A stretch of DNA of 64,000 bases from Bugula neritina (taxonomy: Eukaryota > Animalia > Bryozoa), in assembly GCA_964035545.1 (NCBI GenBank), contig OZ037773.1, positions 4,183,751 to 4,247,750 of the forward strand, in the 5' to 3' direction. The notes beneath the pieces are model-generated. The model had not been told where the DNA came from and made no database searches. It saw nothing but the letters and a program-made list of their open reading frames with translations. The position numbers were made by a program, and so were the translations under genes. Positions 36,319-49,203 of this stretch are shown piece after piece; positions within the stretch are counted from its first letter, which is position 1, and each line of letters starts with the position of its first letter.

Positions 36319-39300
36319 ATGAAATATAGTATGCAATGGCAGGTTGTCTTTGTAGTAATCAGCATCAGTTTCTTTCTCAACATCTACATGTTCACATTTC
36401 TTCTCTATCCAGCTACGAGCAGGAACAACCATGGTAAGGCTTGGTATATATTATTTTTTGTCATTTTATGTTGGGACAAATGTAGTAATACGCACGTGTC
36501 ATAAATAATAGCAGGTATGTTTTATACTTAGTTGTTTTGTATGATGTTAGTTTTGCTAGCTGTTATTAAAAGATTGCATGAGATAAAGTTTATTTAAAAT
36601 TAGCTTTGTTTGTTAGTTAATTAGTTAGTTAGTTAGTTGGTGTTAATTGCTGTGTTGGTTTGAGTCATTTTTAACTACCATCCGTTTTAGTTTAGTTGAA
36701 CAAAAATTCTTCTCCGATGTAGATTTAAATATTTTTAATTTAGTTGCAGATGGAAAGTCCTTGGATAAAAATAAACAAAATCAGCTGACTTTAGTTATTC
36801 TTATCATGACAGCTCCTGGTAATCAAGGTATTTGTAGTCATCAGTATATTTGTATGTCACTTGTATATTTATCTACAAATATTATGCTTGATTTGTAATG
36901 GAAATTAGGTGATCAATTCATAATGCCATTCTCATTTTGTCGAATTTTTATATAGCTGAAAAGCAGATTTTAATTGACCACATTATGGACAGAGAAAGAA
37001 TTTAAGTATGCTATAATTAGTTTATAATTAGTTTTGTGGTTGTACAAAATTTGGCTTTTTTTATATCAGTGACTGCCATGAAAAATTCAATTGCATCTGG
37101 CTTAATTAATGGTCAGATTTGTTTAACTTCAGTCAATCTGAATCATTGCATATTTGACAGTTAGAAGAGATGCTATTCGACAAACTTGGGCTTCCAAACT
37201 ACCCTCTGCCCAATCACGGGTTTACTTTGTTTTGGGCTCTCAAAACTTGGACAAGGTGTTGCTCAGAAATGTTTTCTCAGAACAACAAATTAATGCTGAC
37301 ATGATTATTTTAGGCAACATCAAAGTGAGTAGCTTGCTTTTTGAAATCTTACAGAGTTTGTAAAATATTTTTTAAATGATTTTCCGTTGTTTGCTAAGAG
37401 GCATCAAAAGTATTAATTACTGGCATTTGTAAATAATATCCGTAAAATTGAAAAAATTGTAGGCTACTAGTTTATAGTCTATTTCAAGGCTCAATCACCA
37501 GCAACAACTTTTTGAAAGTAGTAAATTATAATTCTTCAATTTTTTTATATCATTTCATTTTTATTGTTAGAAATAAGTTTATTTTCAGGATTCTTATTTC
37601 AAGTTGACTGAGAAGATAGTAGAAGGTATTTCAGTTGTGTTGGAGAGACATAATGTTACATATATCATGAAGTGTGATGATGATACATTCATAGACAGTG
37701 TGAAGCTGTTTGAAAAACTAAACACTTTACCTGCTTCTAAACTGTACTGGGGCTATTTTACAGGTAAAGAGAAAATGTGATTTTGTTTCACATTGATTGC
37801 TAGTTCTAAAAATTAGTATTCTCATATTAAAAATTTAGCTGTCAAAGTATGAAATTGAGTAGTTTTATGGGACTTTGTTCTTTTAATGTGATTAGAATTT
37901 GTGCAAAGGTTTTTGCAACTTTATTAGGTATATACAAGTAAGAAGTTAATTTTTGCACCTGTTACATAAACAAGTATAAATAACTACAGCTAAACATTGT
38001 TTACATATTTCAACCAACTACTGAAACTATGTAATAATTTGTTTTTAGCCTGATATTATTACTATTGTTAATGTCATATTCGTTTACTACTTCGAATTTT
38101 GTTTTAATTCTAGTTTTATTGTGATTAAAAAGCCAGTATAGGAAATTGTGCATTCTTCAATCAGGAGCTGCTCGTGTGAAGACTCAGGGTCAGTGGGCGG
38201 AGCCTAACTATCACCTTTGTGACAGATACTTGCCGTACGCTAGAGGTGGGGGTTATGTGTTGACACAAGATTTAGCTCAGTATATTCTGACTAATAGAAA
38301 CCTTCTGCAGACGTACAACAGTGAAGATGTGACTATAGGTGAGTCATTTTACTACTATAGGTGAGTCATCTTACTGATATAGGTGAGTCATTTTACTACT
38401 ATAGGTGAGTCATTTTACTACTATAGGTGAGTCATTATTCTACTATAGGTGAATCATTATTCTACTATAGGTGAGCCATTTTACTACTATAGGTGAGTCA
38501 TTATACTTCTATTGCTTGGGAGCATCCGTGGTTTAGGGGTTAGAGCTTTGGCCTAATAAACACGAAGTTGTGGTTTCAAACCGCAGTAAGACCATTGGTG
38601 ATGTTAGGAAGAGCATCCAGTCATAATAACTTATGTGCCACATTTGAGTAAGTTCTTATCCTGCTTTTAAAAAACCTTTACCATCAGGGGTGACTACAAG
38701 CTCATGTGAGTTCTTTATTATATTACTATAGCTCAATACAGGAGGTAACTACTTGACTTTGTGATTACTATTATAGGTTAGAATAAAACCGTCTATGGCT
38801 TGGCTCAGGTTTGTATAGTCAGCTAAAATCAGTGGTAGAATATCAGACATTTTTTTCAATCAATACCTTAAGAAAGGAGTTGTTAAGTTAGAATTGTTCT
38901 TTTTCATTATATTGCTTAGTGTATTTCATAGCACTTCTAACTCAAATAGCACTATTTTTTAATCTTTTGTAAGTATTTTCACTTGCCTCAGAAATGTGTA
39001 CCTTTATTTTGGAGTTATGCTTACATGCTAAGTGATTTAGTGACAACATTACTTATATTTTCATTTCATCATAAAATTAGTGAAAAGGTTAAAAATATAA
39101 AATTGAGTGATAAAATATTAAATTAGTAATAGACAGATTGCAATTAAAACATGATATTATATTCCTTACACCTCACTGCATAAATTATATTTCATGTGCC
39201 CACAAGTACGTAATTTACTCATAAACAAGCATATCAGGTCACTTGGTATGTAACATAAGAATATAATAAATTTAAGACAATAAATTCTTTTAAAAAGTAT

Positions 39301-42300
39301 GCATGAAATACATAATAAGCTTGCGTATGTTTAACATAATTTTTCTTTTGTTTTTTAGTTCAAAAATGAAAATTTTAAGTTTTACATCATATAGCATAAA
39401 CTACGTCAGCATTTGTCCACTCATCATTGGTGTGAAATTTTACTGCAAGCTTTCCCACTGTGTCTGAAGCACTTTGAGCATTGAAAACTTATATCTCAGA
39501 GTGCAGTCAATCTGGGGCTGTTGCTTGTCAAGCATTCTGCCACGGTCACCAATGACTAAGATTTTGGTTATATTTGCTATTGTCTTCTGAGCTATTCCCT
39601 CTATCCACCCATCTGTCATACTCTCTGCACAGAGTGCCAGCTTATTCCAACCTTTGCTGTTGAAGTATTCATAGACCTCACCTATGTTTGCGCTGTCGGG
39701 TGTAGCTGTATCCCTTTGACTTTCACACTCATCTATCATTCGTCTCTTAAACTCTCCCGCAAAGGTTTTATATTGACTCATTGCTTTGTGTAATTCCTTC
39801 ACTGCCTCACAGAAGTACTGAATCAGGAAAGAACCCTTCATTTCTACCCAACTACTGTGATTTTCAATACATGCATGTATAATGTACGTATCAGAACCAA
39901 TGGGTATGTATTTGTCAGGGTTGATTTTGTTGTCTAGCATTTTCCTTATTTTGTTTGATAAAGAAAGACGTCTTATATCTTCTGCACTGTCTGCGACAAC
40001 CAGCATTCTGTTACCACGACAAGTCTGGATTAGAAATATTTTGGGTATACTTCTGAACTTTACGCTATCTTGAATTTTCTCCACCACATCCTTTTTAACA
40101 TCACGAAGGTGACAGCTTCCATGATAACTGTGATCAGCTTCCCTTGATTGACTGTTACAACAGGCTGGGCTTATTTCAGATTCTGCCAAAAAAAATTTGC
40201 CGTTCTCCAGGCCATGGGACATTAGAACGAACAATAGGAAGTCGTATCTTTGCTCATCTGGTCTTTCTTCTAGCAGATTGTCAATGAAGACATCAAATTG
40301 GTGTTGTGATTCAGTATCTTTAAGGCATGTAAGGTTTTGTCCAAGAAGAAGGTTCTGGTCACTGTCATCCAAATTGAATGTCTCTTTCAGTATTTGTTCA
40401 TCTTTTTCATACTCTAGTTTGTCATTTCCATACCAACGAAGACTATCATGGATGTAGCGGAAAGAAGAGTTCCTTACTATCACAAACAGTCCTTTGTTTT
40501 TGATTTCATATTCTGATTGAGCTTTTCTAGAGCTCTTGTAGTAACGTACTTGTAGCTGCCCTAAAGCATCATCATTAGTATCTTTTTCTTCAGCAGCAGT
40601 ATTGGCACTGGCTACAAATAGTTAGATTCAGATATACTTGGTTACTGAAATTAGCAAGTGTTTCCAGAATGACTTTATTTTAATTAAATTTTATTGATTA
40701 TAAATGTTTCTTTTTAAATTATCAAATTGAATATTTTTCAGAGTCAATTACAGAGGTTCTAGATTATAAATTTAACAAAAGAAGTTGTGTTCAACTCACG
40801 TCCCAAACTAAAGTTTAACAAAAATTTAAAGAACATAGGCTATCTCAATTTCTCCACTAAATGGAAGTCAACTATAGAGAGTTCATATTCACTGAAAACG
40901 TATTCTTGATACTAATGAAAAGGTTAACTTTATATTTGAAAGAAATAAATAGCTTACTTAATGTTGGATCAGCAGTTGAATGGTGTCCTTGGTCATCCAA
41001 AGAAGTATTATTTGAAGCCATGTTGTTTAGTAGAAGCAGACTACTAGCAGTGCCCACTCTTTACAAAATGCTACTGATGAAAGTGTGTGGTATAGCAATA
41101 ACTAAGTTACATATTGCCTAATAGTACACATATACATCCTGGTACCATCAAGGAAGTGGGTATAAATTGCACAAGTCATGGAACAAATATTTGTCATGAT
41201 GCTAAATCACCAGTGAAACAAAGAGTAATTAATATTTTGAAATGAGATACAGTATTGCAGCAAACGACTTTTGAAGGTATGAGTCATAGAATTATTTCAC
41301 GCGAACTGTGGGGGAGATAACTTTCTGCTATGCAGCCTTAGTTTATAGTAAGCTAATAGCTAGAAGACTGCATTGAGTCGACTGGGGAAAATTATAGCTG
41401 TGCATATTTTTTGGCGTTGCAGATAAAATACATGTTATATATAATTACTGCTGTTTAAATAAAAGCTAAACGACATAATTTTAAAAGTCACGATTCATTA
41501 AGCAATAAATAGATTTCCAAAATGAATCATTATACTTATTTTGAGAGGGAAGAAAAAGAGAATGCGCAAAATAAAGTATATTTTGATTTTTCCCCTAATA
41601 ACATCCTTCTGCATTTTTGGGCTGTTTCTAGTCATTTTGTTTTCTTTTATAATTGCAATGTTGACAGTCGCAGATAATTCCTAAAGCCAAATATTGTTTA
41701 GTAAGACAAAACTTTCACTGTCAAACTGAGGTTGATGCTCAACTATACGAGCCCTTGCATGATGTTGAAAGGAAAGTAGCATAATATACATTTATATAAT
41801 TTGGGATCAATAAACAAAAATATTAAGCAAGTTCTGGCCGTAGCTGTTTTATTTTAAGTTAAAATCAAAGCCTTTCTATGACTTGGCACAGGTTTGTATA
41901 TTCAGCTAAAATCAGTGGTAGAATAATTATATGAAAAAATTTTTTCAAACAACACCTTAAGAATAGAGTTGTGTTAACTTGTTAAGTTAGAATTGTTCTG
42001 TTTATTATATTGCTTAGTGTATTTCATCGCACTTCTAACTCAAATAGCACTATTTTGTTATCTTCTGTAAGTATTTTCACTTGCCTCCAAAATGTGTACC
42101 TTTATTTTGGAGTTATGCTTACATGCTAAGTGATTTATTGACAACATTACTTATATATTCCTTTCATCATAAGATTGGTGAAAGGGTTAAAAATATAAAG
42201 TTGAGGGATAAAATATTAAATTAGTGATAGACAGATTGCAATTAAAACATGATATTATATTCCTTACACTTCACAGCATAAGTTATATTTCATGTGCCCA

Positions 42301-45300
42301 CAAGTACATAATTTACTCATAAACAAGCATATCAAGTCCCTTGGTATGTAACATAAGAATATAATACAATTAAGACAATATATTCTTATAAAAGTCTGCA
42401 TGAAATATATAATAAGCTTTCGTATGTTTAACATAATCTATTTTTCAATTTTTCAATTGGAACATGAAAAATTTAAGTTTTTCATCATATAGCATAAACT
42501 ACGTCAGCATTTGTCCACCCATCATTGGTGTGAAATTTTACTGCAAGCTTTCCCACTGTGTCTGAAGCACTTTGAGCATTGAGAACTTATATCTCAGAGT
42601 GCAGTCAATCTGGGGCTGTTGCTTGTCGAACACTCTGCCACGGTCACCAATGACTAGAATTTTGGTTATATTTGCTATTGTCTTCTGAGCTATTCCCTCT
42701 ATCCACCCATCTGTCATACTCTCTGCACACAGTGCCAGCTTATTCCAACCTTTGCTGTTGAAGTATTCGTAGACCTCACCTATGTTTGCGCTGTCGGGTG
42801 TAGCTGTATCTCTTTGACTTTCACACTCATCTATCATTTGTCTCTTAAACTCTCCCGCAAAGGTTTTATATTGACTCATTGCTGCGTGTAATTCCTTTAC
42901 TGCCTCACAGAAGTGCTGAATCAGGAAAGAACCTTTCATTTCTACCCAACTACTGTGATCTTCAATACATGCATGTATAATGTACGTATCAGAACCAATG
43001 GGTATGTATTTGTCAGGGTTGATTTTGTTGTCTAGCATTTTCCTTATTTTGTTTGATAAAGAAAAACGTCTTATATCTTCATCTTCTACACTGTCTGCGA
43101 CAACCAGCATTCTGTCACCATGGCAAGTCTGGATCAGAAATATTTTGGGTATACTTCTGAACTTTGCGCTATCTTGAATTTTCTCCACCACATCCTTTTT
43201 AACATCACGAAGGTGACAGCTTCCATGATAACTGTGATCAGCTTCCCTTGATTCACTGTTACAACAGGCTGGGCTTTCTTCAGATTCTGCCAAAAAGAAT
43301 TTGCCATTCTCCAGGCCATAGGACATTAGTACAAACAATAGGAAGTCGTATGTTTGCTCATCCGGTCTTTCTTCTAGCAGATTGTCAATGAAGACATCAA
43401 ACTGGTTTTGTAGTTTAGTGTCTTTTTGGCATGTAAGGTTTTGGCCAAGAAGAAGATTCTGGGCGCTGTCATCCAAATTGAATGTCTCTTTTAGTATTTG
43501 TTCATCTTTTTCATTCTCTAGTTTCTCATTTTCATACCACCAAAGACTATCATGGATGTAGTGGAAAGAAGAGTTCCTTACTATCACAAACAGTCCTTTG
43601 TTTTTGATTTCATATTCTGATTGAGCTTTTCTAGAGTTTTTGTAGTAACGTACCAATAACTGCCTTAAAGTATCATCATTAGTACCTTTTTCTTCAGCAG
43701 CAGTATTGGCACTGGCTACAAATAGCTAGATTCAGATATACTTGGTTACTGAAATTTGCAAGTGTTTCCAGAATGACTTAATTTTAATTAAATTTTATTG
43801 ATTATAAATGTTTCTTTTTAAATTATCAAGTTGAACATTTTTCAGAGTCAATTACAGAGATTCTAGATTATAAATTTAACAAAAGAAGTTGTGTTCAACC
43901 CACGTCCCAAACTAAAGTTTAACAAAAGTTTAAAGAACATAAGCTATCTTATTTTCTCCACTAAAAGTAAATGGAAGTCAACTACAGAGAGTTCATACTC
44001 ACTGAAAACGTATTCTTGATACTAATAAAAAAGTTAATTTTATATTTGAAAGAAATAAATATCTTACTTAATGTTGGATCAGCAGTTGAATGATGTCCTT
44101 GGTCATCCAAAGAAGTATTATTTGAAGCCATGTTGTTTAGTATAAGCAGGCTACTAGCAGTGCTCACTCTTCACAAAGTGCTACCAATGAAAGTGTGTGG
44201 TATAGCAATAACAAAGTTACATATTGCCTAATAGTACACATATACATCCTGGTACCATCAAAGAAGTGGGTATAAATTACACAAGTCATGGAGCAAATAT
44301 TTGTCATGAGGCTAAATCACCAGTGAAACAAAGAGTAATTAACATTTTGAAATGAGGTACAGTATTGCAGCAAACAACTTTTGAAGGTATGAGTCATAGA
44401 ATTATTTCACGCGAACTGTGGGGGAGACAACCTTCTGCTATGCAGTTTTAGTTTATAGTACTAGCTAAAGGACTAAATTGAGTCGAATGGGAAAAATTAT
44501 AGCTGTGCATGTTTTTTAGTGCTGAACTTAAAATATTTTATATATAGTTCCTGCTGTTTGTTGAAATAATAGAAGCCAAACAACATAATTTAAAAACAAT
44601 GGTGATTTACTTATAGAAAACAGGAATAAATATATTTACAAAATAAATGTTGATCATTATATCTATTTTGAGATTAAAAACATAAAGAAATATATTTTAA
44701 TTTTCTCCTTATAACATGCTTCTGTACTTTTGGGCTTTTTCTAGTTATTTTGTTTTCCTTTTATAATTACAATATTGACAGTCCCAGATAATACCTAAAG
44801 CCAAATATTGTTTAGTAAGACAAAACTTTCACTGTCAAACTGAGGTTGATGCTCAACTATACAAGCCCTTGCATGATGCTGAAAGGAAAGTAGCGTAATA
44901 TACATTTATATAATTTGGGATCAATACACAAAAATATTAAGCAAGTTCTGACCGTAGCTGTTTTATTTTAAGTTAAAATAAAAGCCTTTCTATGACTTAG
45001 CCTTTGAAGAGCTTTCAGTCATAATAACTTCTGTGCCATATTTGAGTAAGTTCTTATCCCGCTTTTAAAAAACCTTTACCATCAGGGGTAACTACAAGCT
45101 CATGTGAGTTCTTTATTATATTACTATAGCTCAACACAGGAGGTAACTACTTGACTTTATGTGATGACTATTAAATTATAGGTTAGAATAAAACCGTCTA
45201 TGACTTGGCTCAGATTTGTATAGTCAGCTAAAATCAGTGGTAGAATATAAGACATTTTTTTCATCAACACTTTAAGAAAGGAGTTGTGTTAACTTGTTAA

Positions 45301-48300
45301 GTTAGCATTGTTCTGTTCATTATAGCCTATTGCTTAGTGTATTTCTAACTCTAACTTCTAACTCAAATAGCACTATTTTGTAATCTTCTGTAAGTATTTT
45401 CACTTGCCTCCAAAATGTGTACCTTTATTTTGGAGTTATGCTTACATGCTAAGTGATGTAGTGACAACATTACTTATATTTTCGTTTCATCATAAGATTG
45501 GCGAAAGGGTTAAGCATATAAAATTGAGGGATAAAATATTAAATTAGTGATAGACAGATTGCAATTAAAACATGATATTATATTCCTTACACCTCACTGC
45601 ATACATTATATTCCATGTGCCCACAAGTACATAATTTAGTCATAAACAAGCATATCAAGTCCCTTGGTATGTAAAATAAGAGTACAATACAATTAAGACA
45701 ATATATTATTATAAAAAGTATGCATGAAATATATAATAAGCTTTCGTATGTTTAACATAATCTATTTTTCAATTTTTCAATTTTTCAATTGGAACATGAA
45801 AAATTTAAGTTTTTCATCATATAGCATAAACTACGTCAGCATTTGTCCACCCATCATTGGTGTGAAATTTTACTGCAAGCTTTCCCACTGTGTCTGAAGC
45901 ACTTTGAGCATTGAGAACTTATATCTCAGAGTGCAGTCAATCTGGGGCTGTTGCTTGTCGAACACTCTGCCACGGTCACCAATGACTAGAATTTTGGTTA
46001 TATTTGCTATTGTCTTCTGAGCTATTCCCTCTATCCACCCATCTGTCATACTCTCTGCACAGAGTGCCAGCTTATTCCAACCTTTGCTGTTGAAGTATTC
46101 GTAGACCTCACCTATGTTTGCGCTGTCAGGTGTAGCTGTATCCCTTTGACTTTCACACTCATCTGTCATTCGTCTCTTAAACTCTCCCACAAAGGTTTTA
46201 TATTGACTCATTGCTGCGTGTAATTCCTTCACTGCCTCACAGAAGCGCTGAATCAGGAAAGAACCCTTTTTTTCTACCCAACTACTGTGATTTTCAATAC
46301 ATGCATGTATAATGTACGTATCAGAACCAATGGGTATGTATTTGTCAGGGTTGATTTTGTTGTCTAGCAATTTTCTTATTTTGTTTGATAAAGAAAACCG
46401 TCTTATATCTTCTGCACTGCTTGTGACAAACCGCATTCTGTCACCATGGCAAGTCTGGATTAGAAATATTTTGGGTATACTTCTGAACTTTGCGCTATCT
46501 TGAATTTTCTCCACTACATCCTTTTTAACATCACGAAGGTGACAGCTTCCATGATAACTGTGATCAGCTTTCCTTGATTCACTGTTACAACAGGCTGGGC
46601 TTTCTTCAGATTCTGCCAAAAAGAATTTGCCATTCTCCAGGCTATAGGACATTAGTACAAACAATAGGAAATCGTATGTTTGCTCATCTGGTCTTTCTTC
46701 TAGCAGATTATCAATGAAGACATCAAACTGGTTTTGTGGTTCAGTGTCTTTAAGGCATGTAAGGTTTTGTCCAAGAAGAAGATTCTGGTCACTGTCATCC
46801 AAATTGAATGTCTCTTTTAGTATTTGTTCATCTTCTTCAGTCTCTAGTTTCTCATTTCCATACCACCAAAGACTATCATGGACATAGCGGAAAGAGGAGT
46901 TCCTTACTATCACAAACAGTCCTTTGTTTTTGATTTCATATTCTGATTGAGCTTTTCTAGAGTTTTTGTAGTAACGTACCAATAACTGCCTTAAAGTATC
47001 ATCATTAGTACCTTTTTCTTCAGCAGCAGTATTGGCACTGGCTACAAATAGCAAGATTCAGATATACTTGGTTACTGAAATTAGCAAGTGTTTCCAGAAT
47101 GACTTTATTTTAATTAAATTTTATTGATTATAAATGTTTCTTTTTAAATTATCAAGTTGAATATTTTTCAGAGTCAATTAGAGAGATTCTAGATTATAAA
47201 TTTAACTAAAGAAGTTGTGTTCAACCCACGTCCCAAACCAAAGTTTAACAAAAATTTAAAGAACATAGGCTATGTCAATCTCTCCACTACTGCTCTTAAA
47301 TGGAAGTCAACTGCAGAGAGTTCATATTCACCAAAAACGTATTCTTGATATTAATGAAAAAGTTAATTTTATATTTGAAAGAAATAAATATCTTACTTAA
47401 TGTTGGATCAGCAGTTGAATGCTGTCCTTGGTCATCCAAAGAAGTATTATTTGAAGCCATGTTGTTTAGTAGAAGCAGACTACTAGCAGTGCTCACTCTT
47501 TACAAAATGCTACCAATGAAAGTGTGTGGTATAGCAAAAGCTAAGTTACATATTGCCTAATAGTACACATATACATCCTGGTACCATCAAGGAAGTGGGT
47601 ATAGATTGCACAAGTCATGGAGCAAATATTTGTCATGAGGCTAAATCACCAGTGAAACAAAGAGTAATTAACATTTTGAAATGAGATACAGCACTGCAGC
47701 AAATAACTTTTGAAGGTATGAGTCATAGAATTATTTCACGCGAACTGTGGGGGAGATAACTTACTGCTATGCAGTTTTAGTTTATATTAAGCTAATAGCT
47801 AGAAGACTACATTGAGTCGACTGGGGAAAAGTATAGCTGTGCATATTTTTTGGCGTTGCAGATAAAATACATGTTATATATAATTACTGCTGTTCAAATA
47901 AAAGCTAAACGACATAATTTAAAAAGTTACGTTTCCATAAAAAATAAATAGATTTCCAAAATGAATCATTATACTTATTTAGAGAGTAAAGAAAAAAAGA
48001 ATGCGCAAAATAAAGTATATTTTTATTTTTCCCCTAATAACATGCTTCTGTATTTTTGGGCTGTTTCTAGTTATTTTGTTTTCCTTTTATAATTGCAATG
48101 TTGACAGCAGTCGCAGATAATTCCTAAAGCCAAATATTGTTTAGTAAGACAAAACTTTCACTGTCAAACTGAGGTTGATGCTCAACTATCCAAGCCCTTG
48201 CATGATTTTGAAAGGAAAGTAGCATAATATACATTTATATAATTTGGGATCAATACACAAAAATATTAAGCAAGTTCTGACCGTAGCTGTTTTATTTTAA

Positions 48301-49203
48301 AAGTCAAATTTTGATGATGTAAATATAAGCTGTTCTAAAATCAAGTTACATAAAATATATTTGGTAATTAATGATTTTTTCAAGTTGTTTACTGTTTACG
48401 CTCTGTTTCTCAATTCTGTTTGACACCATATGTAAACCTAAAAATTGTTGCATATCAGCTAGTGACATTCAACAATTGTGAATTGACTCTTCAATGTTCA
48501 GTGGGAATGGTGGAAGGATATCATGTTTGAGCATTTCTGCTTTTCCTTCGTTGTGCAGAATATTTCAAGCTCTTCATAACATCATGTGGATTAGTACCAA
48601 TAAGTTTCAATCTGCCCTATCAAACAAACAGGTGGCAGAAACTTTTAACTAAATTGATTGTCAATGTAATATATTTCACTGGTATTGTTATAATATCAAT
48701 CAGAGCTGTTCAATAATTTAAATTAGTGGCTGTGAATCACTCATCCTTGTTATTGTCATCATCTGTGTGCAATAAACATTAAGTTCCTGCTAATCAGCTC
48801 ATATTTATATTTCACAATATGTATGTTTCAATCATGGTTATTAGTACTTCTACTTAATAAGCATGATCCCTTGTTATTTTCTGGAAATTAACCATCTCTC
48901 TATGCTACATGCCGCTAACACTAAATTATTAGTAAAGTTACTTAATTGATTTTTACAGGAGTATGGCTAGCACCTCTCGATATAACTCGACTTCATGACG
49001 TTGGCTTTGATACTGAGGCTAAATCTAGAGGATGTTTAAATCACCATATTGTCAGTCATAAGCAGACGGTGAATGACATGACGTCAAAGCATGAGTCACT
49101 AGAGAGCACTGGAAGGTTGTGTGCTCATGAAGTCGTATATAAGAAAGAGTATATATACAATTGGGACGTTCCACCCAGTCAATGCTGTACTGTTAAGACA
49201 TAG
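36319..49203 (+). CDS. B3GALT6: Beta-1,3-galactosyltransferase 6 (GT31; GAG linker galactosyltransferase II)
   Basis: Exons 36319-36433, 36744(or 36750)-36827, 37161-37324, 37589-37763, 38165-38338, 48959-49203. N-terminal TM; RRDAIRQTW, KLTEK, KCDDDTF, LYWGYF, LCDRYLPYARGGGYVL, SEDVTIGVWLAP, FDTEAKSRGC, YNWDVPPSQCC. Confidence 0.92.
38331..38502 (+). repeat. 22-bp tandem repeat containing the B3GALT6 exon-5 donor (8 copies)
   Basis: TATAG|GTGA at 38339, 38361, 38383, 38405, 38427, 38449, 38471 and 38493. Confidence 0.92.
38518..38712 (+). mobile_element. tRNA-derived SINE
   Basis: A-box-like TGGTTTAGGGG, B-box-like GGTTTCAAACC; core ggtgatgttaggaagagcatccagtcata is shared with the copy at 58376; its 3' half is duplicated at ~45008-45112. 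Confidence 0.75.
39440..41021 (-). CDS. Caspase-like protein copy 1 (C14 fold; His-Cys dyad intact), 411 aa
   Basis: Exon 1 40958-41021 (MASNNTSLDD...PTL) splices in phase 1 to exon 2 39440-40611. Motifs KNKGLFVIVRN, FLLFVLMSHG, PKIFLIQTCRG, IPIGSD, GSFLIQYFCE, KQQPQIDCTLRYKF. Confidence 0.9.
42538..44131 (-). CDS. Caspase-like protein copy 2, predicted inactive (SHG->SYG, QTCRG->QTCHG)
   Basis: Exons 44068-44131 and 42538-43715; frame open, splice sites intact. Confidence 0.87.
45870..47460 (-). CDS. Caspase-like protein copy 3, predicted inactive (SHG->SYS, QTCRG->QTCHG)
   Basis: Exons 47397-47460 and 45870-47041; frame open, splice sites intact. Confidence 0.87.

What the first reader, a model, noticed from the sequence alone, without database searches (positions are those of the whole stretch)
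39440..40611. Caspase fold without the Asp-specificity arginines and with a large small-subunit insertion
Seen: the usual S-W-R...GS-W-FIQ loop reads SSWVEMKGSFLIQ (R->V) in copies 1 and 2 and SSWVEKKGSFLIQ in copy 3. The R-x-G-T-x-x-D segment reads GNDKLEYEKD with no Arg. There is roughly 50-60 aa extra between FCEAVKE and KQQP, a Cys/His-rich insert after the His (PACCNS..HSYHGSCH), and only a short prodomain (no CARD/DED). Known: caspase-1 Arg179 and Arg341 bind P1 Asp. Inference: copy 1 is a non-aspartase caspase of unknown specificity, or is itself weakly active.
Basis: partly seen in the sequence, partly recalled or inferred. Interest (0 to 1): 0.75.

Follow-up and report, generated by a model that had tools for sequence, protein, structure and literature searches.

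The report
Divergent bryozoan caspase lacking S1 arginines
A bryozoan (moss animal) gene encodes a caspase-type protease that keeps its catalytic residues but lacks the two arginines that make caspases cut after aspartate. It belongs to a family named so far only in bryozoans and also carries a zinc-finger-like insert, so its cutting specificity is probably unusual but is untested.

Summary
Window 39440-40611 (minus strand) is exon 2 of a two-exon, 411-aa gene. Its model has a caspase fold (Z about 22 to caspase-8/3/7/6).

**Active site.** His (SHG) and Cys (QTCRG) are kept. A profile-profile alignment puts Val at the Arg341 position and Lys, not Arg, at the Arg179 position.

**Two inserts without a caspase counterpart:**
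- About 20 aa with a Cys-Cys...His...Cys pattern, just after the catalytic His.
- About 56 aa, predicted helical, between helices alpha4 and alpha5.

**These are family traits, not decay.** In 31 relatives, none has Arg at either position. The 341 position is Val in 26 of 31. Gln283 is kept in 30 of 31. The Cys/His set and one Arg (R169) are almost invariant. The only named members are uncharacterized proteins of the bryozoans Bugula neritina and Watersipora subatra.

**Constraint and expression.** dN/dS is 0.23-0.37. The predicted splice appears in RNA-seq contigs, but these come from another strain's orthologue.

**Most likely reading:** a working caspase-fold protease with a rebuilt, non-basic S1 pocket, hence probably no strict Asp specificity, plus a probable structural zinc site. 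Activity, specificity and metal binding are untested.

The scan had already noted this array (s1-441655). I class it as a new variant of a known kind, of moderate interest.

The parts
40958..41021 (-). Exon 1 of copy 1: ATG plus 21 codons and the first base of codon 22. It encodes the disordered N-terminus.
   Evidence: Sequence read. ATG and GT donor located. The N-terminus is the same as in the annotated B. neritina protein P0001.
40612..40957 (-). Phase-1 intron, 346 nt, GT..AG.
   Evidence: A joint from 40611 to 40958 that skips 346 nt (CT..AC on the plus strand) is seen in contigs of RNA-seq runs X1 and X2. Donor and acceptor printed.
39440..40611 (-). Exon 2 of copy 1: 389 full codons plus the stop. 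It holds the whole caspase domain. The full protein is 411 aa.
   Evidence: - Open frame.
- Pfam PF00656: E 3e-10, 40.6 bits against a cut-off of 21.4.
- AF2 model: pLDDT 77, pTM 0.79.
- Structure match: Z 21-22 to caspases.
40421..40444 (-). Extra residues 56-63 in the L1 loop (SLRWYGND). Trp59 is conserved in the family. Position 58 is hypervariable.
   Evidence: hhalign leaves this stretch unmatched. Trp is present in 20 of 31 members. Position 58 reads R/W/W/C/H/H/D/D across eight close copies.
40400..40420 (-). KLEYEKD, the counterpart of the caspase R-x-G-T-x-x-D segment. Lys64 sits at the Arg179-equivalent position.
   Evidence: hhalign column pairing. Across the family this position is K 8, E 8, T 3, P 3 and others, with no Arg.
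40211..40222 (-). MSHG: catalytic His132 (His154 of the full protein) and the oxyanion-hole Gly.
   Evidence: Copies 2 and 3 read SYG and SYS here.
40103..40168 (-). Family-specific insert after the catalytic His (residues 148-167). It has the pattern Cys-Cys...His...Cys-His and is followed by the invariant Arg169. Probable structural metal (zinc) site.
   Evidence: No counterpart in ordinary caspases.

Conservation:
- C150: 31 of 31.
- A second Cys: 29 of 31, spaced as CC, CxC, Cx2C or Cx4C.
- H160: 27 of 31.
- C166: 30 of 31.
- R169: 31 of 31.

These residues are kept even in members that have lost the catalytic residues. Zinc binding is an inference.
40013..40027 (-). QTCRG: catalytic Cys197 (Cys219 of the full protein) and Gln195, the Gln283 equivalent.
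   Evidence: Gln is kept in 30 of 31 family members.
39902..40012 (-). [quoted passage not shown] In copy 1 it contains VVAD-S.
   Evidence: Modelled with low confidence for residues 204-216. The Asp site is not conserved even among close paralogues.
39845..39853 (-). S-W-V in loop L3. Val255 (Val277 of the full protein) takes the place of Arg341.
   Evidence: Across the family this position is V 26, A 2, L 1, I 1 and one gap, out of 31.
39608..39775 (-). Insertion of about 56 aa in the small subunit (residues 279-334), between helices alpha4 and alpha5. Predicted helical.
   Evidence: Unmatched in hhalign. AF2 places helices at 261-297, 309-318 and 328-332, with pLDDT 49-69 in the insert.
42538..44131 (-). 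Copy 2 (paralogue). Same two-exon structure, with His132 changed to Tyr and CRG changed to CHG.
45870..47460 (-). Copy 3 (paralogue). Same two-exon structure, reading SYS and CHG at the catalytic motifs.

Best explanation
Copy 1 is a real two-exon gene of a bryozoan in the Bugula neritina complex. It encodes a 411-aa single-domain protein with the caspase fold, and it belongs to a distinct caspase clade whose only named members are bryozoan proteins.

**Kept machinery.** The clade keeps the catalytic parts: His in SHG, Cys in Q-x-C-R-G, the Gly of the oxyanion hole, and the Gln283 equivalent.

**Rebuilt S1 pocket.** The pocket that reads the residue before the cut is different from other caspases.
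- The Arg341 position is an aliphatic residue, Val in copy 1.
- The Arg179 position is not conserved, Lys in copy 1.
- An extra L1 segment carries a conserved Trp.

The S1 set (variable / Gln / Val) matches neither caspases (Arg / Gln / Arg) nor meta- and paracaspases (Leu / Asp / Asp-Glu). I therefore infer an active cysteine protease whose P1 preference is not the strict Asp of caspases. Which residue it prefers is unknown.

**First insert.** Just after the catalytic His there is a conserved set of Cys, Cys, His and Cys, followed by an invariant Arg. I infer that this forms a small structural metal-binding (zinc) knuckle. From my recollection of the caspase fold, it sits on the hairpin that borders the prime side of the cleft.

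**Second insert.** About 56 helical residues lie between alpha4 and alpha5. By fold topology this is on the face away from the active site.

**Prodomain and activation.** There is no CARD or DED, so recruitment to a death-fold platform is not expected. How the protein is activated is unknown.

**Shown:** gene model, fold, residue substitutions, family conservation and selective constraint.

**Inferred:** catalytic activity, altered specificity, zinc binding, and the positions of the inserts relative to the cleft.
For: **Gene model**
- ATG at 41021, GT..AG intron at 40957-40612, open frame to 39440.
- The N-terminus is identical to that of the annotated protein P0001.
- The splice joint 40611/40958 is present in RNA-seq contigs.

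**Fold**
- Pfam PF00656 scores above its cut-off.
- The AF2 model has pTM 0.79.
- Foldseek top hits are caspase-7, -3 and -8 at E about 3e-13.
- VIA-align gives Z 21-22, about 220 aligned residues and rmsd 3.0-3.6 Å.

**S1 residues**
- The reference S1 sets for caspases and meta/paracaspases are from PMC2064784.

**Catalytic residues look selected for.** His and Cys are kept together in 24 of 31 members and lost together in 7. Six of those 7 form one clade.

**Constraint**
- dN/dS is 0.23 against the syntenic orthologue P0001 and 0.28-0.34 against copies 2 and 3.
- The excess of synonymous changes has p = 1e-8 to 8e-5.

**Distinct clade.** The family separates from 17 other caspases on a branch with SH-aLRT 99.

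**Taxa.** The only named members are from Bugula neritina and Watersipora subatra.
Against: - No enzymatic data exist.
I also could not check whether the three Cys and the His converge on one point.
- Copy 1 has Lys at the Arg179 position and keeps Gln283, so some affinity for acidic P1 residues could remain.
- Copy 1's linker contains VVAD-S, which looks like a caspase-type processing site, although it is not conserved.
- Two sister copies 3 kb away have lost the catalytic His without visibly faster protein evolution. The fold may therefore have a use that does not need catalysis.
- The RNA contigs are 95-97% identical to copy 1 and carry another strain's letters. Expression of this particular copy is not shown.
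Confidence: 0.5

Rival explanations
1. It is still an acid-directed caspase that cuts after Asp or Glu. Lys64 at the Arg179 position, Gln195 and perhaps another basic residue brought in by the inserts (the invariant Arg169, or Arg58 of copy 1) make up for the lost Arg341. The result would be weaker or relaxed Asp/Glu specificity.
For: - Lys aligns with Arg179 in copy 1 and in 8 of 31 family members.
- Gln283 is conserved.
- Arg169 is invariant.
- Copy 1's linker has VVAD-S.
Against: - The Arg179 position is Glu in 8 of 31 members and Thr or Pro in 6. The clade therefore does not select for a base there.
- Arg169 is also invariant in the catalytically dead members, which points to a structural role.
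- Arg58 is unique to copy 1.
- The VVAD site is absent from close paralogues.
- From my knowledge of caspase biochemistry, not from a paper read here: mutating either S1 arginine in known caspases abolishes activity on Asp substrates.
Confidence: 0.2
2. Despite its intact dyad, copy 1 acts mainly as a non-catalytic partner. It would be a scaffold or regulator that pairs with other members of this genome's very large caspase repertoire, as c-FLIP pairs with caspase-8.
For: - Sister copies 2 and 3 lost His132 and changed CRG to CHG, yet keep open frames with dN/dS about 0.35.
- The family contains an old catalytically dead clade that keeps the Cys/His insert and Arg169.
- The genome has at least 177 Peptidase_C14 matches.
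Against: - His, Cys, the oxyanion Gly, Gln283 and the whole SHG / QxCRG context are conserved in 24 of 31 members, across branches of 0.5-1 changes per site. This is hard to explain without selection for catalysis.
- There is no evidence of any partner.
- The dimer prediction gave no verdict.
Confidence: 0.17
3. Copy 1 is a young duplicate on its way to becoming a pseudogene, and the odd S1 residues are decay.
For: It lies in a tandem array with two copies that have lost the catalytic His. No copy-specific transcript was shown.
Against: - The same S1 residues and inserts occur in all 31 family members, including another bryozoan genus.
- The frame and splice sites are intact.
- dN/dS is 0.23 against the syntenic orthologue, with p = 1e-8.
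Confidence: 0.03

Closest known systems
Animal caspases without a death-fold prodomain (caspase-3, -6 and -7; MEROPS family C14A)
   Same: - Same fold: Z 21-22, about 220 of about 235 residues aligned.
- SHG His, Q-x-C-R-G Cys and Gln283.
- The S-W dipeptide before position 341, the GS-[FW]-x-I-Q start of alpha4 and the K-Q-x-P ... S-T-L end motif.
- A short prodomain without CARD or DED.
- Best sequence hits in the PDB are caspase-6 and caspase-7.
   Different: - Arg341 is replaced by Val, and Arg179 by Lys in copy 1 (variable across the family).
- There are extra L1 residues with a conserved Trp.
- There is a Cys/His insert of about 20 aa after the catalytic His, and an insert of about 56 aa between alpha4 and alpha5.
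- No conserved Asp processing site is present in the linker.
- Structure-based sequence identity is only about 20%, and the PDB sequence E-values are 1e-5 to 5e-3.
Metacaspases and paracaspases (C14B, e.g. AtMC9, MALT1)
   Same: They share the caspase/haemoglobinase fold, and they too lack the two S1 arginines.
   Different: Those families have an acidic S1 pocket: Asp at the 283 position and Asp or Glu at the 341 position (PMC2064784). This protein keeps Gln at 283 and has Val at 341. Its best sequence and structure matches are animal caspases.
Mollusc caspases with single S1 or S3 substitutions (Mytilus galloprovincialis caspase-2 and caspase-3/7-4)
   Same: These lophotrochozoan caspases have Arg341 substituted (PMC3037946). 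A missing Arg341 alone is therefore not unprecedented.
   Different: In those proteins Arg179 is conserved. The paper reports no Cys/His insert or alpha4-alpha5 insert, and the substitutions are isolated cases rather than a conserved clade trait.
Pseudocaspases such as c-FLIP
   Same: Copies 2 and 3 next door, and one old subclade of the family, have lost catalytic residues while keeping the fold.
   Different: Copy 1 keeps His, Cys, the oxyanion Gly and Gln283.

Membership tests
Caspase family (Pfam Peptidase_C14 / MEROPS C14A) | Sequence match to the family model above the curated threshold | tested here: met
   PF00656 gives E 3e-10 and 40.6 bits against a cut-off of 21.4. The match covers only profile positions 60-211.
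Caspase family (Pfam Peptidase_C14 / MEROPS C14A) | Caspase/haemoglobinase fold with large- and small-subunit parts | tested here: met
   The AF2 model (pTM 0.79) matches caspase-8, -3, -7 and -6 at Z 21-22 across model residues about 26-383. Foldseek gives E about 3e-13.
Caspase family (Pfam Peptidase_C14 / MEROPS C14A) | Catalytic His (SHG) and Cys (QACxG) dyad | tested here: met
   MSHG lies at 40211-40222 and QTCRG at 40013-40027. Both align to the caspase motifs.
Caspase family (Pfam Peptidase_C14 / MEROPS C14A) | Basic S1 pocket made of Arg179, Gln283 and Arg341 | tested here: not met
   The aligned residues are Lys64, Gln195 and Val255. Across the family, no member of 31 has Arg at either position. 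This is tested by alignment only, not on coordinates.
Caspase family (Pfam Peptidase_C14 / MEROPS C14A) | Cleavage after Asp | not testable with these tools
   This needs recombinant enzyme and substrate profiling.
Caspase family (Pfam Peptidase_C14 / MEROPS C14A) | Asp processing site in the linker between subunits | tested here: inconclusive
   Copy 1 has VVAD-S. Close paralogues read VVTD-S, VRTK-S or lack the segment, and the wider family has no conserved Asp there.
Metacaspase / paracaspase (C14B) | Acidic S1 pocket: Asp at the 283 position and Asp or Glu at the 341 position | tested here: not met
   The residues are Gln195 and Val255. The criterion is taken from PMC2064784.
Pseudocaspase (c-FLIP-like) | Loss of the catalytic Cys and/or His | tested here: not met
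   Copy 1 keeps both. Copies 2 and 3 have lost His132.
Initiator or inflammatory caspases | CARD or DED prodomain | tested here: not met
   Pfam finds only PF00656 in the exon-2 product and in the full-length orthologue P0001. The N-terminal roughly 50 residues are modelled as disordered.

The most novel reading that the evidence does not exclude
Bryozoans carry a third kind of S1 pocket within protease family C14: a neutral or hydrophobic pocket made of an aliphatic residue at the Arg341 position, a conserved Trp in a lengthened L1 loop, and the retained Gln. This would give a P1 preference that is neither Asp (caspases) nor Arg/Lys (meta- and paracaspases). It would be coupled to a structural Cys-Cys-His-Cys zinc knuckle beside the catalytic His, which shapes or gates the prime side of the cleft. 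An old catalytically dead sister clade, and young dead copies such as copies 2 and 3, would serve as partners or regulators.
Probability: 0.3. Interest if true: 0.75.

Novelty: new variant of a known kind. Interest (0 to 1): 0.55.

Why it matters
Strict cleavage after aspartate defines caspases and is set by Arg179, Gln283 and Arg341. This clade is conserved and under selection, keeps the catalytic dyad, and has replaced both arginines with uncharged or variable residues. It would therefore be a natural test of how P1 specificity evolves in clan CD proteases. It could also yield a protease with a new specificity.

The nearly invariant Cys/His insert next to the catalytic His would be, as far as I know, the first built-in metal site in a caspase domain. 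That suggests redox or zinc control.

The family also bears on what the very large bryozoan caspase repertoire does. The proteins are currently annotated only as hypothetical or uncharacterized, and my searches found no paper that describes them.

Tried and rejected
**Homodimer prediction.** Complex prediction on residues 29-389 in two copies gave no verdict: 0.42 against a control at 0.25. I do not use it as evidence either way.

**Model coordinates.** They are not exposed. I could not measure distances in the S1 pocket or between the Cys/His ligands.

**Copy-specific expression.** The runs that could be laid hold contigs only 95-97% identical to copy 1, with letters of another strain's orthologues (P0001/P0002-like). 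They show the splice and a retained His codon, but not expression of this copy.

**Word-based protein search.** It found only the three B. neritina proteins. With the family profile it added only one unnamed protein. The wider family came from the exhaustive profile search.

**Origin of the unnamed members.**
- Sample accessions gave no paper.
- One sample label begins with 'BRYA'.
- P0010 is not in this genome.
- Their taxa remain unknown.

**Other checks.**
- The ESM Atlas searches by features and by shape returned only ordinary caspases.
- I found no papers on bryozoan caspases of this kind.
- I considered and rejected Arg58 (SLRWY) as the true Arg179 equivalent. It lies in the unmatched L1 insertion and is not conserved even among 90%-identical copies.

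**Limits I kept to.**
- The joined two-exon protein was not sent to any search or fold. All searches used exon 2 by reference, which is 389 of the 411 residues. Exon 1 (21 codons) is too short to search.
- Read laying was given 1,801 letters.
Full report
**What is there.** The window is AT-rich animal DNA. It is contig C9:4183751-4247750 of a 216-Mb genome. The closest database proteins are three hypothetical proteins of the bryozoan Bugula neritina, at 91%, 87% and 46% identity. Earlier notes of this scan also place the genome in the B. neritina complex.

- The ATG is at 41021.
- Exon 1 ends at 40958.
- A 346-nt GT..AG phase-1 intron spans 40957-40612.
- Exon 2 runs to the stop at 39440-39442.

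The product is 411 aa and starts exactly like the annotated orthologue P0001. A contig joint from 40611 to 40958, with CT..AC ends on the plus strand, is present in two RNA-seq runs of one sample. These contigs are only 95-97% identical to copy 1 and carry letters typical of the other assembly's orthologues. They prove the splice and the transcription of a His-bearing orthologue, not of this copy.

The gene is the first of three tandem copies spaced 3.1-3.3 kb apart. Two more distant paralogues lie at 9.04 Mb on the same contig.

**Check of the observation.** All quoted motifs are present.
- Pfam reports only Peptidase_C14, above its threshold.
- phmmer and a family profile hit caspase-6 and caspase-7 in the PDB, and they pair S-W-V with the S-W-R / S-H-R of those enzymes.
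- A profile-profile alignment of 31 family members against 12 ordinary caspases gives probability 99.8% and E 2e-29.

That alignment pairs Val255 with the Arg341 equivalent and Lys64 (in KLEYEKD) with the Arg179 equivalent. It also pairs SHG with SHG, QTCRG with QACRG, and the C-terminal KQQP...TLR with K-x-x-P...STL. It leaves three stretches unmatched:
- eight L1 residues (56-63);
- about 23 residues after SHG;
- about 57 residues between alpha4 and alpha5.

Residue numbers are those of the exon-2 product. Add 22 for the full protein.

**Fold.** An AlphaFold2 model built on the family alignment has mean pLDDT 77 and pTM 0.79.
- It has a confident core and a disordered N-terminus.
- Confidence is low in the inter-subunit linker (204-216).
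- Confidence is 49-69 in the helical small-subunit insert.
- Foldseek's best hits are caspase-7, -3 and -8 at E about 3e-13.
- VIA-align gives Z 21-22 with about 220 aligned residues at rmsd 3.0-3.6 Å for caspase-8, -3, -7 and -6. These are effectively tied.
- The ESM Atlas returns only ordinary caspases, which cover about 235 of the 389 residues.

**A family, not an accident.** An exhaustive profile search found 40 cluster representatives at E < 1e-10. Many of them cover the full length. In an alignment of 31 members:

| Position | Count in 31 members |
|---|---|
| Arg179 equivalent | Arg 0; K 8, E 8, T 3, P 3, others |
| Arg341 equivalent | Arg 0; V 26, A 2, L 1, I 1, one gap |
| Gln283 equivalent | Gln 30 |
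| Catalytic His and Cys | kept together in 24, lost together in 7 |
| C150 in the insert | 31 |
| Second Cys (CC, CxC, Cx2C or Cx4C) | 29 |
| H160 | 27 |
| C166 | 30 |
| Arg169 after the insert | 31 |

A quick maximum-likelihood tree separates the family from 17 other caspase sequences by a branch with SH-aLRT 99. It also groups six of the seven catalytically dead members in one clade. The comparison set was chosen by the search itself and holds no named references, so the parent caspase lineage is not resolved.

The named members are only B. neritina proteins (EB796_004839, _017609, _002175) and five 'uncharacterized' proteins of another cheilostome bryozoan, Watersipora subatra. The rest come from unnamed ENA and Logan assemblies.

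This genome has five family genes among at least 177 Peptidase_C14 matches.

**Constraint.** Nei-Gojobori dN/dS values are:
- 0.23 between copy 1 and its syntenic orthologue P0001, which also lies beside or inside a galactosyltransferase gene;
- 0.28-0.34 between copy 1 and copies 2 and 3;
- 0.20-0.51 for the other close pairs compared, whose dS is not saturated.

The excess of synonymous differences is highly significant, with p = 1e-8 for copy 1 against P0001. Lineage-specific changes are few: 7 non-synonymous and 7 synonymous on copy 1. They do not distinguish copy 1 from copies 2 and 3.

**How it most likely works.** According to PMC2064784, caspases form a basic S1 pocket from Arg179, Gln283 and Arg341. 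Meta- and paracaspases form an acidic one, with Leu, Asp and Asp/Glu at the same positions. This clade has variable / Gln / Val, a third arrangement.

The catalytic apparatus is conserved over long branches, and its parts are lost only together. The simplest reading is therefore an active cysteine protease whose P1 recognition no longer depends on a pair of arginines, and so is probably not a strict aspartase. Which residue it prefers cannot be derived here. The conserved aliphatic residue and the conserved Trp of the lengthened L1 loop suggest a less polar pocket. The conserved Asp70 six residues after the 179 position, which meta- and paracaspases and gingipain R use to bind P1 Arg, leaves a basic P1 possible.

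The Cys-Cys...His...Cys set has variable spacing between the first two Cys, and it survives in dead members. That fits a structural metal site better than a catalytic role. From my recollection of caspase-3 and caspase-1 structures, not measured here, it lies at the tip of the hairpin that follows the catalytic His and borders the S1' side.

The alpha4-alpha5 insert should lie on the face opposite the active site by fold topology. Watersipora-type members carry a further insert of more than 100 aa in the L4 region.

**Rivals.**
- Residual Asp/Glu specificity through Lys64 and Gln195: 0.2.
- A mainly non-catalytic partner role, suggested by the neighbouring His-less copies and the old dead clade: 0.17.
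- Pseudogene decay: 0.03.

**Comparison and novelty.** Substitution of Arg341 alone has been reported in two Mytilus caspases, with Arg179 retained (PMC3037946). I found no paper on this bryozoan clade, on loss of both arginines as a conserved clade trait, or on a Cys/His insert in a caspase domain. I cannot exclude papers outside the searchable library.

The protein meets the fold, dyad and Pfam criteria of caspases but fails the S1 criterion. It fails the acidic-pocket criterion of meta- and paracaspases. I class it as a new variant of a known kind.

**Limits.**
- The dimer prediction gave no verdict.
- The joined two-exon protein was not submitted to any search or fold; exon 2 was used by reference throughout.

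Noticed in passing
window 37154-38364 and 48946-49203 (+ strand), around the array at 39440-47460: Exon-like ORFs of a beta-1,3-galactosyltransferase-like gene lie on the opposite strand, on both sides of the three-copy caspase array. The array therefore seems to sit inside an intron of about 10.6 kb of that gene. In assembly GCA_010799875.2 the orthologue P0001 is likewise nested in a Galactosyl_T gene (L006). The naming of the window's own ORFs rests on their sequence by eye and on that annotated neighbour; I ran no family scan on them.
   Followed up: partly
window 42538-44131 and 45870-47460 (- strand): Copies 2 and 3 share the derived changes His132Tyr and Arg198His (CRG to CHG). Copy 3 also has Gly133Ser. 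Their frames and splice sites are intact, and dN/dS between them is about 0.35. The two tandem P0002-type genes of the other B. neritina assembly keep SHG and CRG (L007), so the loss is recent.
   Followed up: partly
window 40826-40859 (inside the intron of copy 1): A stretch of about 34 nt has very high contig depth in all four laid runs: up to about 51,000 in X2, and 190-270 in X3 and X4. The contigs run on into unrelated sequence on both sides. It looks like a short element shared with many abundant transcripts or repeats. It is unexplained.
   Followed up: no
L004 1408-2601 and L005 1441-2625 (G000:C9 about 9.044 and 9.050 Mb): Two further family paralogues lie 6 kb apart and are about 49% identical to copy 1. 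Both keep SHG and QTCRG, have Val at the Arg341 position, and have Thr or Pro at the Arg179 position.
   Followed up: partly
L021 377-1333 (G000:C4:5000976-5001932, - strand): The best Peptidase_C14 match in the genome shows the opposite pattern. It keeps both S1 arginines (R-H-G-V-E-H-D and S-W-R-R) but has D-A-S-F-G in place of QACRG, so it has no catalytic Cys.
   Followed up: no
proteins P0015, P0022, P0029, P0030, P0031, P0043 (P0030 = Watersipora subatra XP_067942608): This is a well-supported subclade of the family (SH-aLRT 99) that has lost both His and Cys. It keeps the Cys/His insert, Arg169, Gln283 and the aliphatic 341 residue, so it looks like an old pseudoenzyme lineage.
   Followed up: partly
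proteins P0011-P0014, P0016-P0018, P0020 (several from Watersipora subatra): These members carry an additional insert of 100 aa or more between helix alpha5 and the KQQP motif. That is the L4 loop, which forms the S4 side of the cleft in ordinary caspases.
   Followed up: no
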